A DNA stretch of 63,624 nucleotides, filler included, from Octopus bimaculoides (Eukaryota), in assembly GCF_001194135.2 (NCBI RefSeq). It is 5 parts of 4 records of this genome, joined end to end, with 100 filler letters (N's around TTAATTAATTAA, not from the genome) between each part and the next. Parts side by side here need not be neighbours in the genome. Positions count along the whole stretch, not along the records: positions 26,283 to 39,797 come from NC_069005.1; 4 more parts are not named here. The stretch is one strand, 5' to 3'. Under the pieces are notes generated by a model. That model saw only the letters and a list, made by a program, of their open reading frames with translations. It was not told where the DNA came from and did not search any database. The position numbers were made by a program, and so were the translations under genes. Shown here in pieces: positions 26,283-35,389 of this stretch (position 1 is its first letter; the number at the start of each line of letters is the position of its first letter).

Positions 26283-26415
26283 AGACGACCGAGTCAGTGA
26301 GAGAGGGGGAGGGGGTGTTATGTGGTCTTCTCGAAGCAGACGACCGAGTCAGTGAGAGAGGGGGAGGGGGTGTTATGTGGTCTTCTCGAAGCAGACGACC
26401 GAGTCAGTGAGAGAA
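26283..26415. repeat. 55-bp tandem repeat beside a gap
   Basis: agacgaccgagtcagtgagag starts at 26283, 26338 and 26393. Confidence 0.9.
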
Positions 26416-28552
26416 GGGGAAGAGATTATTCCTGTTGAAAGCGGTGATTATCTCTTAAACTTATGTGATATATCTTTTGACATTATTCATTATTTTTTTA
26501 TTCACACATATCACATGATTGCAACGAGTTGTATATTATGTATATTAAAAATATTTATTGTTATTAAGAAATATTGTTGAAGAGATAAATAAATATTGTT
26601 GAAATAATACAACAAAAAAGGAATGTGGGTGCCAGAGAGAAATATTTAATAAAAATATTTACTTAATACACAAGGAGAGTTTCACCACCAAAGTCAGTAC
26701 AAGCAATATTTTCAGTGAATAACTCGACATTTTCAATCAAAATTATTTTTATGCACATTTACGTATTTATTATATAAATATTTTCCTATTTGTTTGATTT
26801 CATCAATATTAAGTCAGTTCGTATTGAGAGATCTCGTATTGATGAACTTCGACATTTAAATAATTGAAAAAAGAACACAATTTACAAAAGTAAACAATAG
26901 AAAACATTTAAAAAAAAAGAAAAAGAAATATATAGAAATAAAGAGACTCACAGTTACCCACGGCACCAGGAGACACTGCTGTTCTCTTCTAAAAACATTT
27001 GTTACAACCCAAAACACTCACCACATTGGAATTATACCAAAAACGACCCAACTGCGGATGATTGCAATGCTGCAACTCTCGAACAGCCTCTTCCTTCGTT
27101 CCACCTACCATTTGAAATTTCATTGAAATGGAACAGCAGTGAAGAGAAAAACTTCATTGACAAAGACACAGCTCACGGCAAACATTTTTCAAATGTTACA
27201 GGTTGAAAAATTATTTTCTATGAAGTCATCCAGCAACATGCAAGGGCTTTATTCCGTAAATATCCACAATAACATGTAGCAACGATATTCTGGGAATATT
27301 TCGATGAAACATTATTAAGGGACATGCCCAAATAATGGAATTGTCAGTTCACACTTGCAATATATATCTTGCAGAGAACTCCATGTAACTGTCTTTAGCC
27401 CCGTAAGCCATGTGTTACTCCATATTTTTGGAGAATACAAATTTATTATTCTTTAACAAGAATAGTATTGACTGTGGCTTCGAAGTTACGGTCAATACTA
27501 TTCTTAAAGAATAATAAATATGTATGAGTGTAACTATATATATACATATGTATGTATGTATGTATGTATATTTTTTTAACAGCAGGACTTGAAGCAGATA
27601 AATTATAAGAAGCAACTTGTAAAATGTTGCGTTAAAAAATCTCTTGGTTGGGAAAAACGAACCCACATCTTCCGTGAACATGACAGACATTCTACCATTA
27701 TGCCAATACAGCCCAACGCATTGAATTTCTTCCATTCACTTTGATCTTACCAGTTAGAATTGTAGAGTGTTTACATCATAAGAATTTAGAAACTTCGATA
27801 GAATGTGAAATAATTTTTTTTTTTTTTTTTAACAGTGGGACTCGAAGGAGATAATAGAATATAGCTTTACTTCGAGTTCCAACTCGGAAAACGATTATTT
27901 TCATATTTCTCGAAGATTCTAAATTCTTATGACGTAAATAATGTGTGTGTGTGTGTGCGTGCGCATACAAACATATATACACACACACACATATTAATGA
28001 TTTTATCAAGTGGAGAGCGTGAAATAAAAACTTTATAGGTAACATTTTTTACTAAATATATAATTATGTCAAAGGGTGCGGGTTGACCACACCAACACGC
28101 TAGAAATAGATGCCAAATGGCTCTAAAAACCACTTATATATATATATATACATAGTTATTTATGCTGATCTGACTAAAGCAACCACTCACACAAACACAC
28201 ACACACTTTATCTTTCTCGGAACATACACAAAATACAAGTTTCGTGTGTTTATACCGTTTCATAAAAATGCTAGATCCAAATCGTGCCCCCAGCAGCTGC
28301 GTCTCAACAATCGATCCATTATTCATTGAGAGATTTCCAAAGTCTCTACAATGTAATCACCCTTAACAAGCTGTTATTATCATTTTGCTAGAAAGAGTTT
28401 CACAACCAGTTTTAAATATACGGTGTAATGGATGCTTTTTTTGTATTTCTTTTCCAGATCTTTTGTACAATTTGTGTCTAGCTTGAAAACAGTTGAAACA
28501 TTGTCCCTTCCGAGTCCTCTAAATGTTTGGTATATTGCTGACTGTTCGATAG

Positions 28553-29896
28553 TCAGAAAGTCTCCGACATCACCGTAAAGAAACAAAATGTAATCAAAAT
28601 TTCCAGAAAGACAATCAGGCAACTGACATAGAAAAGGTAATAATCTAAAAGATCGCAAAGTTGGCGCCTGGTCTCGACTCCATCGGTGATTCTGGGTTTG
28701 TCATTGAGGTAAGACTCATGGACTCCGGCTATTACTTCTGGAGCGTCAGATTTCCACGTGTTTTTAAGCAGAGGTAAAAATAGACTTCGGGTCATGTTAA
28801 CAAATGAAACCAAAGTTGCTCGCTTGTTTCTCTCGTTGTTGCAAGAGTGAATTCGCTGCAAGAAACTGCCCAAACCGTATGGGAAAGTAAACGGGTTTCT
28901 GTGGCAGTGTCTGACCCGAGTGATGAAACAGGAGAGCATGAAAGTCAAAATGCATTGTATCACATAAAGGATGACAAAGACGGCCAGGATTGAAACCTGG
29001 CCGGCACTGTGCGGTAGTATACTGCTGAAACTGTTCATGAAAACAGCGAAAGAAAGAATCAGAACATTGGAGAAGGATATTTTTTCGCCAGTGTCAACTG
29101 GTATCAAAAAGACGAGTGTTGTACAGAAATACATGAGAAGCAATGGCGATATAACAACGAGCATGTAATAAAGATAATTACGTTGGATGGTGAAGAAGAA
29201 ATAGATTTTACTGGCGCAATTTTCGGTGGAGACTTTTTCGTTCATTTTCGCTTCAACCTTCAACAAATGCCAACCATCATGAATGCTAAAGTGAGACATG
29301 TTGTATGCGTTGTCAGGGTGCACGTTGATGCACACCCGGTTTTCTATGTCGGCCAGGGTGGAGAAGACGATTTCACAGACTTGGGTATCGAACGGAAAGT
29401 GAGAGACTTTGATGCGACAATGGGTCGTGTAGACGTCCGTGCTTTTCATGTAGACATCTCCGGTGTAGTCGATTCGTAACGGCTGGGATGCCATCGTGTA
29501 AGCATTAACGGCGTTGATGACCATCAGCGGCGGCGTCCATACGGAAGTAGATTTCAGAACAAGATATTCAATTCCATCGTGTTTTGAAGGATTCCACGTC
29601 AAAATTTCGTCCGTCCATTGCTGGAAAATCGAACCTTTTAAAGTGAAGATTTCATTTTTTTCGTCTATACTGACGATATAGTCGAGATAAAAAGTCACAA
29701 ACAATTGAACATCATCCGATGAATTATAGAGGGGTTTGATCTCACTGTCATAGTCCTTCATTAGTTCTTTCTTTAATCGGCCCTCCGGGGGCAACTTGCT
29801 TTCTGAACAGAGAGTAGACTGTATCGACACTATTAATGCCAGCAATAGAAACGATAATGTTGGTGAGGGCGGAAACAGCGACGTTCGATCGGTCAT
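28553..29896 (-). CDS. Intronless atypical nicotinic-AChR-like Cys-loop channel subunit (cephalopod chemotactile receptor-type), 447 aa
   Basis: ATG at 29896 (MTDRTSL...) and TGA at 28553. Signal peptide (SFLLLALIVSIQSTLC); ECD motifs LMKDYD, IDEKNE, WTDEILTWNP, VWTP; Cys-loop CRIKVSHFPFDTQVC (29419-29375). M1 YYMLVVISPLLLMYFCTTLVFLIP, M2 GEKISFSNVLILSFAVFMNSFSSILP, M3 VSILAVFVILYVIQCILTFMLSCFI, M4 LLDYYLFYVSCLIVFLEILITFCFF. No loop-C YxCC. Confidence 0.95.
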   Translation of the reverse strand: MTDRTSLFPPSPTLSFLLLALIVSIQSTLCSESKLPPEGRLKKELMKDYDSEIKPLYNSSDDVQLFVTFYLDYIVSIDEKNEIFTLKGSIFQQWTDEILTWNPSKHDGIEYLVLKSTSVWTPPLMVINAVNAYTMASQPLRIDYTGDVYMKSTDVYTTHCRIKVSHFPFDTQVCEIVFSTLADIENRVCINVHPDNAYNMSHFSIHDGWHLLKVEAKMNEKVSTENCASKIYFFFTIQRNYLYYMLVVISPLLLMYFCTTLVFLIPVDTGEKISFSNVLILSFAVFMNSFSSILPHSAGQVSILAVFVILYVIQCILTFMLSCFITRVRHCHRNPFTFPYGLGSFLQRIHSCNNERNKRATLVSFVNMTRSLFLPLLKNTWKSDAPEVIAGVHESYLNDKPRITDGVETRRQLCDLLDYYLFYVSCLIVFLEILITFCFFTVMSETF

Positions 29897-30043
29897 AATT
29901 GATAGGAACGGAGTCAGTTGGAAACGAATTTGTGTAAGAATGAAAAATATATTGAAAGAGATGAAGATGGACGAGCGACAGGATGCTGGAGAAGTTTGAA
30001 AAGTGAGACATGGAAGTGTTGAAAGTATCGATAAATAGCAATA

Positions 30044-30081
30044 AATATATAAGAGCTTCGTGCAGGAGCTTTTTTGATTGG
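30044..30081 (-). promoter_or_regulatory. Candidate CCAAT + TATA-like promoter of the receptor gene
   Basis: Minus strand reads CCAAT (30081-30077), then TATATATT (30051-30044), about 150 bp upstream of the ATG. Short motifs in AT-rich DNA, so weak. Confidence 0.3.
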
Positions 30082-30083
30082 AT

Positions 30084-30119
<36 letters not shown>

Positions 30120-30988
30120 AGCGTAGATACGTAAACAAAAAATATAAAAAGCAAGTATATGAAATAATTATCTAAAGATTAAAAAATCTCGTGATAAGGG
30201 TGGTGTAAGGGTGGGCGATAGAGAAAGAAAGAAAAAGAGATTGAGAGAGGGAGGAGAAAGAAATACAGAGGTAGGTAAGTGGGAGGTAGAGAGACAGACA
30301 GACAGACAGAACGGGGTGGATATTAATGGAGAATAAAGAAGTGTATTTCTATTGATTTACGAGGGACAATAATGGTGTTTTGTTAATAATAGTGTTTCTT
30401 GTTTTGTTGTCAAACAATAAGTTGTAGCTTCTCTCGCTCCTCTTTAGATCCGTTTAATCAACTTAATGCAAACACTTGATAACAAGAAAACTAATAGAAG
30501 AATTGTCATAAAGGCGGTGGCCGCAACACGGCGGTATCGGAGGACTGGTGGTGGTGGTGGTGGTGGGACTAGTGGTGGTGGTGGTGGTGGTTTTAGACGT
30601 GACGTGATTATGAGGAGCATTATTGTCATCTTCCTCTTTCTAATCATCCCCACCANNNNNNNNNNNAGTGGTGGTGGTGGTGGTGGTGGGACTAGTGGTG
30701 GTGGTGGTGGTGGGACTAGTGGTGGTGGTGGTGGTGGTTTTAGACGTGACGTGATTATGAGGAGCATTATTGTCATCTTCCTCTTTCTAATCATCCCCAC
30801 CATCATCATTATCATCTCCATCGTCGTCATCATCATCAATGTGGTCGCCGTCGTCGTCTCAACATCATCGACATTGTCACAAAGGTGGATTCAAAATGAA
30901 ACCTGAGAGTAGAAATGGGAAGTTATAGTGTTCATGCCTTTCCACTCGGCATTAATGACAGGAGTAAAGTAAACTGGCGTCAGTTGTG

Positions 30989-31020
<32 letters not shown>

Positions 31021-31732
31021 TGTACACATGTCTAGTACGACTTTAAACAACATCCGGTTGTGGGGAACCTGGTTCGAGAGTTCCACTGATTTGTGGAACA
31101 TCAAATCACTTCATCGCCACTATTTTTCCCAAGAGAAATGGCACAGTTGAAAACCAAGTTCCAACAGTAAACAATGACGCCGTTGATTCCCCCAGTCCCC
31201 ACCCCGCCCCAACACCTATCTTGGAACTATCCCTGTTAGAAGTGACGAAAGCCATACGGTTGCAGACATCCCGGGAGATACCAGGTTCTGAGACAGGGAA
31301 GGAGGAGCAGCGTACAGACCGAAGGCCAAGAGGCCCGCTAGTACACACACACACACGTATGTATGTATGTATGTATGTATGTATGTATGTATGTATGTAT
31401 GTATGTATGTATGTATGTGGCGACTATGACGACGATGGTGGCGCAGGTGGCACTGGTGTTGCATATGACAACAACAACAACAGCAATTCTGTTATTAACA
31501 ATGCAAGTATTTTTTACCCATTTTTTTTTTTTTTATGTTTCTTTCCAGATTTATTTAGATTAATTTTCAAACGAAACATTGTTTTGTTTCCTTCTCTCAA
31601 CACGCAACTCTACAACATCCGGCACACACACATCAGGCACACACCACAACGCCAACGACAGCCAACGACAACAGCACAACACTGTCACGCACACAAGACC
31701 GCCACCACCACAAAATACACGTTCATAATAAC

Positions 31733-32975: not shown

Positions 32976-33021
<46 letters not shown>

Positions 33022-34875: not shown

Positions 34876-34909
<34 letters not shown>

Positions 34910-35389
34910 GTGTGTGTGACCTTAAAAGAAAGTATGGATGTATGTAGTTATACAGACACACTGAAAGTCCATTGCAGAAATGCACGTCAAGTTTACTGAC
35001 CAAGTGAACAGTTAACAACTGATCAATTACACCAAACACACACACACACATTACAGACTTTTTGTTTTTTAACATATTCAAATAAAGAAAATTTTTAATA
35101 TAAATAAAATAAAATAAAAAAACTCGTCTGAAATTTTTAGAAAATGGTAAATAAATTAAAAAAATAAAAGAAAAACCTTTACAACCAAGCAACAAAGTGA
35201 ACAAGCATTGCACAAACAAATGCAGACACATACATGCAGAGTAACATAGCAGTGCAGAGGGATTCTTTTGGTGGTAAGGTAACATCACCATGACAACTTG
35301 TTAATTTGAAGTAGGAACAGGGTTGAGAAACAAAGGATCAGAACATATCTATATATATATATATATATAGACAGACACACACACACACA

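What the first reader, a model, noticed from the sequence alone, without database searches (positions are those of the whole stretch)
28553..29896. Intact chemotactile-receptor-type channel that has lost every acetylcholine-cage residue
Seen: complete single-exon pLGIC ORF. Loop A reads WTPPLMVIN (no Tyr), loop B FSTLAD (no Trp), loop D KGSIFQQW (no Trp55 equivalent) and loop C KVSTENCASKIY (no Tyr190, no CC). Established: octopus atypical nAChR-like genes (CRs) lack these residues, are enriched in suckers and detect poorly soluble compounds by contact. Inference: this is a CR subunit with an unknown ligand, possibly an uncharacterised family member.
Basis: partly seen in the sequence, partly recalled or inferred. 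Interest (0 to 1): 0.8.

Follow-up and report, generated by a model that had tools for sequence, protein, structure and literature searches.

The report
Orphan octopus acetylcholine-receptor-like channel gene
This is an intact, evolutionarily conserved octopus ion-channel gene of the nicotinic-receptor type that can no longer bind acetylcholine in the usual way, but I could not show that it belongs to the octopus "taste-by-touch" receptor family, and such genes are common in molluscs.

Summary
Window 28553-29896 (- strand) is an uninterrupted 447-codon ORF encoding a complete pentameric ligand-gated channel subunit. It has a signal peptide, a ligand-binding domain with an intact Cys-loop, M1-M4 and a GEK cation-selectivity motif. 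The acetylcholine aromatic-box positions read S89, I127, L181, and loop C lacks both the CC pair and any aromatic residue.

The window is Octopus bimaculoides chromosome record CM046625.1, and the exact protein is already in public databases. Single-exon 1:1 orthologues exist in O. vulgaris and O. sinensis (90% identity) and in Argonauta hians (67%). dN/dS is 0.1-0.3, and 0.03-0.05 in M1-M3, so the gene is functional.

The "chemotactile receptor (CR)" label is not established.
- Solved CRT1 never appears among its PDB matches, although CRT1 does appear for an abalone relative.
- Apart from its own orthologues, every named protein among the 24 representative clusters checked is non-cephalopod, at 33% identity or less.
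- A neighbour-joining tree gives no supported sister group.
- The 26 CRs are published as a cluster on chromosome 15. This gene sits on a small chromosome, probably chromosome 25.

No CR sequence could be retrieved, so no tree including CRs was built.

The parts
28553..29896 (-). Complete coding sequence, 447 codons plus TGA stop, with no intron in the CDS
   Evidence: The identical protein is called as a single-exon gene on GCA_001194135.2 CM046625.1.
29807..29896 (-). Signal peptide (about aa 1-30, MTDRTSLFPPSPTLSFLLLALIVSIQSTLC)
   Evidence: There is a hydrophobic helix at 12-28 in the model. This is the least conserved part of the protein between orthologues. The cleavage site is inferred.
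29177..29806 (-). Extracellular ligand-binding domain (aa 31-240)
   Evidence: Pfam Neur_chan_LBD covers aa 39-240 with E=3.7e-40. dN/dS is 0.22 against O. vulgaris.
29630..29632 (-). Codon S89, at the position of loop D Trp55
   Evidence: The residue is conserved in all four orthologues.
29516..29518 (-). Codon I127, at the position of loop A Tyr93
   Evidence: It is Ser in Argonauta.
29375..29419 (-). Cys-loop C160-C174 (CRIKVSHFPFDTQVC)
   Evidence: The sequence is identical in the three Octopus species and has one change in Argonauta.
29354..29356 (-). Codon L181, at the position of loop B Trp149
   Evidence: It is Met in Argonauta.
29210..29242 (-). Loop C tip (aa 219-229, NEKVSTENCAS): no aromatic residue and a single Cys (C227)
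   Evidence: This is the most variable binding loop among the orthologues.
28904..29176 (-). Transmembrane helices M1-M3 (aa 241-331)
   Evidence: Model helices are at 241-264, 271-293 and 303-330. dN/dS is 0.03-0.05.
29021..29089 (-). M2 pore lining from -2' to 20' (GEKISFSNVLILSFAVFMNSFSS). It has -1' Glu, 9' Leu, 16' Asn and 20' Ser.
   Evidence: The segment is identical in all four species.
28694..28903 (-). Intracellular M3-M4 loop (aa 332-401)
   Evidence: Model confidence is low here. Identity to Argonauta is 48%.
28556..28693 (-). M4 helix and C-terminus (aa 402-447)
   Evidence: Model helix at 402-446. The last 20 residues are identical in all four species.

Best explanation
The gene encodes a functional, cation-selective pentameric ligand-gated channel subunit descended from nicotinic receptors. 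It has been kept as a single-copy, intronless gene in octopods (Octopus and Argonauta) and is not gated by acetylcholine through the classical aromatic cage.

Shown:
- The ORF is intact.
- All structural and gating hallmarks are present: the Cys-loop FPFD, the beta1-beta2 DEKNE motif, the pre-M1 Arg239, -1' Glu and 9' Leu.
- Purifying selection is strongest on the pore.
- The ligand-binding loops evolve faster than the rest of the protein.

Inferred:
- It assembles into pentamers, alone or with other subunits. A non-cholinergic ligand opens it at the subunit-interface pocket. That pocket is now lined by I127, L181, S89, F91 and Y149, plus the charged R141, K151 and D183.
- It is an orphan long-branch lineage. 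It is best filed with the many divergent, cage-less nicotinic-like subunits of molluscs rather than with the 26 clustered chemotactile receptors.

The tissue of expression and the ligand are unknown.
For: - Family and fold.
- Residue mapping.
- Origin and prior annotation.
- Orthologues are single-exon, with no second channel gene called within 10 kb in four species.
- dN/dS is 0.21-0.34 for O. bimaculoides against O. vulgaris or O. sinensis. It is 0.11 against Argonauta, 0.03-0.05 in M1-M3 and 0.22 in the ligand-binding domain. M2 is identical in all four species.
- Only the CDS is still alignable between Octopus and Argonauta.
- An exhaustive HMMER search of 1.84 billion representatives finds nothing above 33% identity outside the orthologue cluster.
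- Named neighbours are scallop, oyster, clam, abalone, limpet, sea slug, nemertean and tardigrade proteins.
- In a neighbour-joining tree the octopod group has 100% bootstrap and its best sister has 24%.
- About a third of the 120 nearest relatives also lack TrpB, and most lack the CC pair.
- Abalone and zebra-mussel relatives are intronless.
- A preprint describes several molluscan clades with convergent loss of ACh-binding residues: PMC13174522.
Against: - No expression evidence was obtained. None of the four orthologous proteins is recorded on a short, transcript-like contig of the collection. This is weak negative evidence.
- No CR sequence could be placed in a tree. A deep sister relationship to the fast-evolving CRs is therefore not excluded, because similarity ranking penalises long branches.
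- The chromosome number rests on my reading of accession order, not on a tool result.
- Pocket residues differ between Octopus and Argonauta (I127S, L181M, F91K, Y149T, R141H). This could mean the pocket is not used at all.
Confidence: 0.6

Rival explanations
1. It is a genuine but divergent chemotactile receptor. On this view it is an early offshoot of the CR family that left the chromosome-15 array. It would be expressed in sucker or other sensory epithelium and would detect contact chemicals, alone or with other CRs.
For: - It shares the CR hallmarks given in reviews: nicotinic descent, an intronless gene, loss of ACh-binding residues, a cation-selective pore and faster evolution in the binding loops (PMC11526382).
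- It is cephalopod-restricted as far as the searches show.
- Leu occupies the TrpB position. CRT1 is described with A152/L153 in its pocket, but the equivalence of those positions is my inference.
- Groups sister to CRs, found outside suckers, have been reported in cephalopod transcriptomes (10.1101/2025.06.15.659772).
Against: - CRT1 is never among its PDB matches, yet CRT1 does match an abalone protein.
- No octopus paralogue appears among the 150 best representatives, as far as those with names show.
- All 26 CRs are reported on chromosome 15, and this locus is on a 35.5-Mb chromosome.
- It is a strict 1:1 orthologue under purifying selection, not part of an expanding, diversifying array.
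- Its pocket positions include Arg, Lys and Asp, whereas the CRT1 pocket is described as exceptionally hydrophobic.
Confidence: 0.2
2. It is a non-ligand-binding accessory subunit. Its own orthosteric pocket would be unused. It would co-assemble with ligand-binding partners (canonical nicotinic subunits or CRs) and tune assembly, trafficking or conductance, as vertebrate beta1, alpha5 and beta3 subunits do.
For: - The pore and M1-M3 are almost invariant (dN/dS 0.03-0.05), while pocket-lining residues are not conserved between Octopus and Argonauta.
- It is single-copy and conserved, unlike tuning receptors.
- CR subunits are reported to combine into varied multimers (10.1101/2025.03.03.641191).
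Against: There is no direct evidence of co-assembly. The ligand-binding domain still shows purifying selection (dN/dS 0.22). Several pocket residues (S89, K151, D183, T180) are conserved across octopods.
Confidence: 0.15
3. It is a silent or decaying retrocopy that happens still to be open.
For: The gene is intronless. No transcript-like contig carrying the exact protein is on record.
Against: The ORF is open in four species spanning the Octopus-Argonauta split. dN/dS is 0.1-0.3 and M2 is identical in all four. Only the CDS survives as alignable DNA against Argonauta.
Confidence: 0.03

Closest known systems
Cephalopod chemotactile receptors (CRT1/CR518, CR840, squid CRB1)
   Same: Both descend from nicotinic receptors, have intronless coding sequences and have lost the acetylcholine aromatic cage. 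Both carry a cation-type pore motif and show faster change in the binding loops than in the pore.
   Different: - This gene is not in the published chromosome-15 array (inferred).
- It shows no detectable preferential similarity to CRT1.
- It is a single-copy 1:1 orthologue, not part of an expansion.
- Its pocket positions include R141, K151 and D183.
- Its expression and ligand are unknown.
Divergent cage-less nicotinic-like subunits of other molluscs (e.g. Haliotis XP_071102249.1 = P0084, XP_048243633.1 = P0130; Dreissena P0007)
   Same: These are its nearest relatives by score, at 24-33% identity. They are single-exon genes and lack loop-C CC, TrpB and other cage residues. They share the GEK pore motif, and P0084 and P0130 share a 'WTP' loop A in place of 'WxPD'.
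   Different: The abalone genes sit in tandem pairs of recent paralogues (62-70% identity), whereas the octopus gene is solitary. No supported sister relationship was found.
Alpo4, orphan nicotinic-like receptor of Alvinella pompejana (PDB 8BX5 and related)
   Same: It is a lophotrochozoan orphan with no CC pair and an unknown agonist. It scores comparably to vertebrate subunits against the window protein (126.8 bits).
   Different: Alpo4 keeps the aromatic cage residues (PMC10338036). This protein does not.
Vertebrate muscle and alpha7 nicotinic receptors
   Same: These are the best sequence and fold matches among solved structures (141 bits; TM 0.7-0.8). They share the gating elements and the -1' Glu and 9' Leu.
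   Different: All agonist-contact aromatic residues are replaced. The 20' ring is Ser rather than acidic. The M3-M4 loop is short.

Membership tests
Cys-loop / pentameric ligand-gated ion channel superfamily | Ligand-binding beta-sandwich with a 13-residue-spaced Cys-loop, followed by four transmembrane helices | tested here: met
   Pfam ligand-binding domain E=3.7e-40. C160-x13-C174 with FPFD. The AF2 topology shows 10 strands plus M1-M4. Foldseek TM is 0.7-0.8 to nicotinic receptor structures.
Cys-loop / pentameric ligand-gated ion channel superfamily | Cation-type selectivity filter (GEK, -1' Glu) and the 9' Leu gate | tested here: met
   M2 numbering. The segment is identical in four species. 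Actual selectivity was not measured.
Acetylcholine-gated nicotinic receptors | Aromatic cage: loop A Tyr, loop B Trp, two loop C Tyr, loop D Trp | tested here: not met
   The positions read I127, L181, S223/T224 and S89. The second loop-C Tyr is ambiguous (Y232 in BLASTP only).
Acetylcholine-gated nicotinic receptors | Vicinal Cys-Cys at the loop C tip (alpha-type subunits) | tested here: not met
   Only C227 is present.
Cephalopod chemotactile receptors (CR) | Intronless coding sequence | tested here: met
   The feature is not specific: abalone and zebra-mussel relatives are also intronless.
Cephalopod chemotactile receptors (CR) | Loss of acetylcholine-binding residues | tested here: met
   The feature is not specific: roughly a third of the 120 nearest relatives lack TrpB and most lack CC.
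Cephalopod chemotactile receptors (CR) | Member of the tandem array on O. bimaculoides chromosome 15 (syntenic with squid chromosome 4) | tested here: inconclusive
   - The cluster location comes from PMC9068888.
- The gene lies at about 343 kb on the 35.5-Mb record CM046625.1.
- The orthologue is on O. vulgaris OX597838.1, in an assembly numbered by homology.
- The accession-to-chromosome mapping (chromosome 25) is from my own knowledge.
- No second channel gene lies within 10 kb. This says little, because octopus gene density is about 8 genes per Mb.
Cephalopod chemotactile receptors (CR) | Phylogenetic placement inside the CR clade | tested here: inconclusive
   No CR sequence could be retrieved. 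Indirect evidence is negative:
- CRT1 is absent from its PDB matches but present for abalone P0084.
- Named nearest relatives are all non-cephalopod.
- There is no supported sister in the neighbour-joining tree.
Cephalopod chemotactile receptors (CR) | Exceptionally hydrophobic orthosteric pocket | tested here: inconclusive
   Pocket positions read I127, L181, F91 and Y149, but also R141, K151, D183 and S89. No model coordinates and no CRT1 alignment were available.
Cephalopod chemotactile receptors (CR) | Enriched expression in sucker sensory epithelium | not testable with these tools
   No expression data could be reached. No paper in the library mentions the orthologue accessions.
Cephalopod chemotactile receptors (CR) | Gated by poorly soluble compounds and not by acetylcholine | not testable with these tools
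   This requires electrophysiology.
Cephalopod chemotactile receptors (CR) | Lineage-specific expansion with diversifying selection in the pocket | tested here: not met
   The gene is a single-copy 1:1 orthologue in four species. Pairwise dN/dS for the ligand-binding domain is 0.22. Site-wise tests were not possible with four sequences.

The most novel reading that the evidence does not exclude
The gene could be a conserved, single-copy partner or co-receptor subunit for octopod sensory channels. This would parallel Orco or IR25a/IR8a beside the fast-evolving tuning receptors. Alternatively it could be the founder of an independent octopod-specific receptor lineage for a polar or charged ligand. 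Either would explain three observations: a near-invariant pore, a solitary locus outside the CR array, and strict 1:1 orthology across Octopus and Argonauta.
Probability: 0.08. Interest if true: 0.7.

Novelty: new member of a known kind. Interest (0 to 1): 0.3.

Why it matters
If the gene proved to be sensory, it would add a conserved, non-clustered member or partner to the octopus taste-by-touch system and give a tractable orphan to de-orphanise.

As the evidence stands, its main value is cautionary. An intronless structure plus a lost acetylcholine cage does not identify a chemotactile receptor, because the same combination occurs in abalone. A single-exon zebra-mussel gene lacks TrpB, Trp55, Asp89, Tyr93 and the CC pair (it keeps a Tyr at the Tyr151 position). 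CR family boundaries need a phylogeny and expression data.

Tried and rejected
1. Retrieving CR sequences for a tree failed.
- The three word-indexed protein searches used the window protein, a 67-sequence profile and abalone P0084. Apart from the orthologues, they returned no cephalopod protein.
- The exhaustive representative search lists only the best 150 hits, without names.
- The key CR papers (PMC7605239, PMC10228259, PMC10262778, PMC4795812, PMC11055638) are not held.
- The MolluscaGenes supplement is not held.

2. Reading the CRT1 sequence out of PDB alignments failed, because only the top five alignments are printed.
- CRT1 ranked 59th for P0084 and 46th for a P0084 segment.
- I then made a bait from P0084 carrying five residues published for the CRT1 pocket. 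This raised CRT1 only from 92.3 to 95.7 bits (rank 50), so my mapping of the published numbering was mostly wrong.
- Searches with P0102 and with the 67-sequence profile did not list CRT1 at all.

3. Foldseek against the PDB showed only vertebrate receptors in its top 50.

4. The neighbour-joining tree of 120 relatives gave no supported sister. No maximum-likelihood program was available.

5. A check of the supplements for chromosome sizes or accession mapping found nothing.

6. Rfam, tRNA and tandem-repeat scans of the piece found only microsatellites.

7. I rejected the 533-codon ORF starting at TTG 30154. The upstream 86 codons are low-complexity, are not conserved in frame in O. vulgaris, and carry stops in Argonauta.
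Full report
**What is in the sequence.**
On the minus strand, an ATG at 29896 opens a 447-codon reading frame that ends at a TGA at 28555-28553. There is no gap or N inside it. The piece is AT-rich, with about 6-7% stop codons expected per codon. The longest stop-free run in 200 shuffles was 205 codons, and the chance of 447 stop-free codons is about 4e-13 per start. G+C rises to 0.43 over the ORF against 0.32-0.35 in the flanks.

The mechanical ORF list extends the frame to a TTG at 30154. That extension is a low-complexity CTT/TTC-type tract. It is not conserved in frame in O. vulgaris and contains stops in Argonauta. The ATG is therefore the start.

**What the protein is.**
- Pfam finds the neurotransmitter-gated channel ligand-binding domain (E=3.7e-40). 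The membrane region scores 27.9 bits, just under its 28.1-bit cut-off.
- The best solved-structure relatives by sequence are vertebrate muscle beta/alpha subunits (141 bits), followed by alpha7 and 5-HT3A. The annelid orphan Alpo4 scores 126.8 bits.
- An AlphaFold2 model built on 67 homologues has mean pLDDT 84.6. It shows the signal helix, the N-terminal helix, ten strands, M1-M3, a poorly defined intracellular loop and a long M4.
- Foldseek returns nicotinic receptors with TM-scores of 0.7-0.8 at 20-25% identity.
- All the coupling elements are canonical: beta1-beta2 SIDEKNE, the Cys-loop C160-C174 with FPFD, and the pre-M1 Arg239.
- M2 reads GEKISFSNVLILSFAVFMNSFSS. This gives -1' Glu and 9' Leu, as in cation-selective nicotinic receptors, with Asn at 16' and Ser at 20'.

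All four quoted strings are there, and the alignments bear out the claim.
- Against human muscle alpha1 (HMMER): Tyr93 -> I127, Trp149 -> L181, Tyr190 -> T224, and Cys192/193 -> N226/C227.
- Against human alpha7 (BLASTP): Trp55 -> S89, Gln57 -> F91, Asp89 -> P123, Leu109 -> R141, Gln117 -> Y149 and Leu119 -> K151.
- The only soft point is the second loop-C tyrosine. BLASTP sets Y232 opposite alpha7 Tyr195, whereas HMMER puts alpha1 Tyr198 in a gap.
- In the model, the loop C tip is residues 219-229 (NEKVSTENCAS) and has no aromatic residue. Y232 is already in beta10, and it is His in Argonauta.

**Where it comes from, and whether it is new.**
The exact protein is encoded once, as a single-exon gene, on Octopus bimaculoides GCA_001194135.2 record CM046625.1 (35.49 Mb), at about 343 kb. 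It is already present in NCBI, UniRef and EukProt.

Its 90%-identity cluster also holds O. vulgaris CAI9741029.1 and O. sinensis XP_029651307.1. Argonauta hians GAB1607972.1 is 67% identical. All carry automatic "acetylcholine receptor subunit alpha-like" names. In each of these genomes the gene span equals the CDS length, and no other channel gene is called within 10 kb. tblastn of the protein against the piece and against 21 kb of the O. bimaculoides locus finds nothing else.

**Is it functional?**

| Comparison or region | dN/dS |
|---|---|
| O. bimaculoides vs O. vulgaris or O. sinensis, whole CDS | 0.21-0.34 |
| vs Argonauta, whole CDS (synonymous sites saturated) | about 0.11 |
| M1-M3 | 0.03-0.05 |
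| Ligand-binding domain (vs O. vulgaris) | 0.22 |
| Intracellular loop (vs O. vulgaris) | 0.33 |

M1-M3 shows one amino-acid change against O. vulgaris. The M2 pore lining and the last 20 residues are identical in all four species.

Between Octopus and Argonauta only the CDS is still alignable. This is a constrained gene, not a decaying retrocopy.

Within the binding loops, S89, T180, D183 and K151 are conserved. Five other positions change between Octopus and Argonauta: I127S, L181M, F91K, Y149T and R141H. The loop C tip is the most variable stretch.

**Is it a chemotactile receptor?**
The library's review gives these defining features for CRs: nicotinic descent, intronless genes, tandem clusters, sucker enrichment, 26 genes in O. 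bimaculoides against about 6 in squid, activation by hydrophobic compounds, and diversifying selection in the pocket (PMC11526382). Neither is discriminating.

- **The two features are widespread.** Among the 120 nearest single-domain relatives from the exhaustive search, most lack the CC pair and roughly a third lack TrpB.
- **Non-cephalopod relatives share the gene structure**.

  | Relative | Gene structure | ACh-binding positions |
  |---|---|---|
  | Haliotis P0130 | single-exon, in a tandem pair 5-8 kb apart | all five scored aromatic-box and loop-A positions and the CC pair lost |
  | Haliotis P0084 | single-exon, in a tandem pair 5-8 kb apart | all five scored aromatic-box and loop-A positions and the CC pair lost |
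  | Haliotis P0003 | single-exon, in a tandem pair 5-8 kb apart | keeps TrpB |
  | Dreissena P0007 | single-exon | TrpB, Trp55, Asp89, Tyr93 and the CC pair lost; Tyr at the Tyr151 position |
  | Pecten P0082 | multi-exon | keeps TrpB |

  A 2026 preprint likewise reports several molluscan clades with convergent loss of ACh-contact residues. It also reports a "CR-like" clade reaching into gastropods, bivalves and chitons (PMC13174522).
- **No octopus paralogue is close.** After the orthologue cluster, the exhaustive search of 1.84 billion representatives drops to 33% identity or less. I looked up 24 clusters outside the orthologue group. Every one with a name is from a scallop, oyster, clam, abalone, limpet, sea slug, nemertean or tardigrade. 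No decapodiform orthologue appears either.
- **No preferential similarity to CRT1.** The PDB copy holds CRT1 as 9e6b_A "Chemotactile receptor CRT1" and 8eis_A "Octopus sensory receptor". These entries show up for abalone P0084: 92.3 bits at rank 59, and E=0.006 for its loop B-to-M1 segment. They are not in the best 60 for the window protein. They are also missing from the complete list of 60 matches at E<=10 for its residues 176-266, a list that reaches down to 5-HT3A and the nematode betaine receptor.
- **The tree is uninformative.** In a neighbour-joining tree the octopod group has 100% bootstrap. It sits about 1.7-1.8 substitutions per site from everything else, and its best sister has 24% support.
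- **The chromosome appears to be wrong for a CR.** Albertin et al. [quoted passage not shown] Squid copies are on Dpe04, in the same ancestral linkage group (PMC9068888). The present gene is on records of 35.5 Mb (O. bimaculoides), 45.6 Mb (O. vulgaris) and 28.9 Mb (O. sinensis). These are small for genomes averaging nearly 80 Mb per chromosome. The O. vulgaris assembly was numbered by homology with O. bimaculoides (PMC10700109). From the accession order I read chromosome 25 in each. That step is my own knowledge, not a tool result.

**Limits.**
I could not obtain any CR sequence, so no tree with CRs was made. CRs evolve fast, and so does this lineage. Similarity ranking could therefore hide a deep sister relationship. 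A cephalopod group "sister to chemotactile receptors" has been reported from salivary-gland transcriptomes.

Absence of neighbours within 10 kb means little at about 8 genes per Mb. No expression data were reachable. None of the four proteins is recorded on a transcript-sized contig, which is at most a weak hint of low expression.

**Most likely mechanism.**
This is a cation-selective channel subunit whose pore and gating machinery are kept intact. Its interface pocket has been rebuilt with aliphatic residues (I127, L181), an aromatic pair (F91, Y149), a small polar residue (S89) and charged residues (R141, K151, D183). It therefore responds to something other than acetylcholine, or it serves as a non-binding partner in heteromers.

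The mixed, partly charged pocket and the strict single-copy conservation differ from what is described for CRT1 and the CR array.

**Verdict.**
The gene is real, intact and constrained. It is already annotated but uncharacterised. It is best described as an octopod-restricted orphan among the many cage-less nicotinic-like subunits of molluscs. CR membership is unproven and, on the indirect evidence, less likely than not.

Noticed in passing
window 30542-30655 and 30689-30802: Two 114-bp blocks at 99% identity flank the 11-N gap at 30656-30666. They lie in a (GGT)n / Pro-Gly-coding low-complexity tract. This looks like a gap-flanking duplication from assembly rather than biology.
   Followed up: partly
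window 26283-26420: A 55-bp unit is repeated 2.5 times at 98% identity, right at the edge of the piece.
   Followed up: no
window 29897-30154: Upstream of the ATG there is an 86-codon stop-free extension made of a CTT/TTC-type tract and (AAGA)9 at 30084-30120. It is not conserved in frame in O. vulgaris and is interrupted by stops in Argonauta, so it is not coding.
   Followed up: yes
window 29330-29332 (C189) and 29216-29218 (C227): Two extra cysteines in the ligand-binding domain are conserved in all four octopod orthologues. One is on beta8 just after loop B, and one is at the loop C tip. Whether they pair, within a subunit or across the interface, could not be judged without model coordinates.
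   Followed up: no
L005 3804-5057 and 10001-11254; L007 10001-11083 and 18707-19783; L008 10001-11134 and 19271-20416: Abalone (Haliotis rufescens and H. cracherodii) carries tandem pairs of single-exon nicotinic-like genes. The P0084 and P0130 families lack the acetylcholine cage, and the P0084 family has paralogues at 62-70% identity. This matches the gene architecture described for octopus CRs.
   Followed up: partly
P0084 (Haliotis cracherodii XP_071102249.1): This abalone protein is the only query for which solved CRT1 entered the PDB match list. Under my alpha7-based mapping of the published CRT1 numbering (an inference; a bait built on related positions gained only about 3 bits), its Phe and Leu lie at positions where published CRT1 pocket residues are F124 and L153. 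It may belong to the 'CR-like' clade reported outside cephalopods (PMC13174522).
   Followed up: partly
L004 12938-21323 (-): In Argonauta hians the nearest called neighbour, 1.6 kb downstream, is a transferrin-domain gene. No neighbour is called within 10 kb in the three Octopus genomes.
   Followed up: no
window 30991-31024, 31357-31418, 32977-33021, 34876-34918, 38458-38537, 39691-39729: There are dense di- and tetranucleotide microsatellites, (TG)n, (GTAT)n and (TA)n, several of them abutting N gaps. No tRNA or Rfam family is present in the piece.
   Followed up: yes
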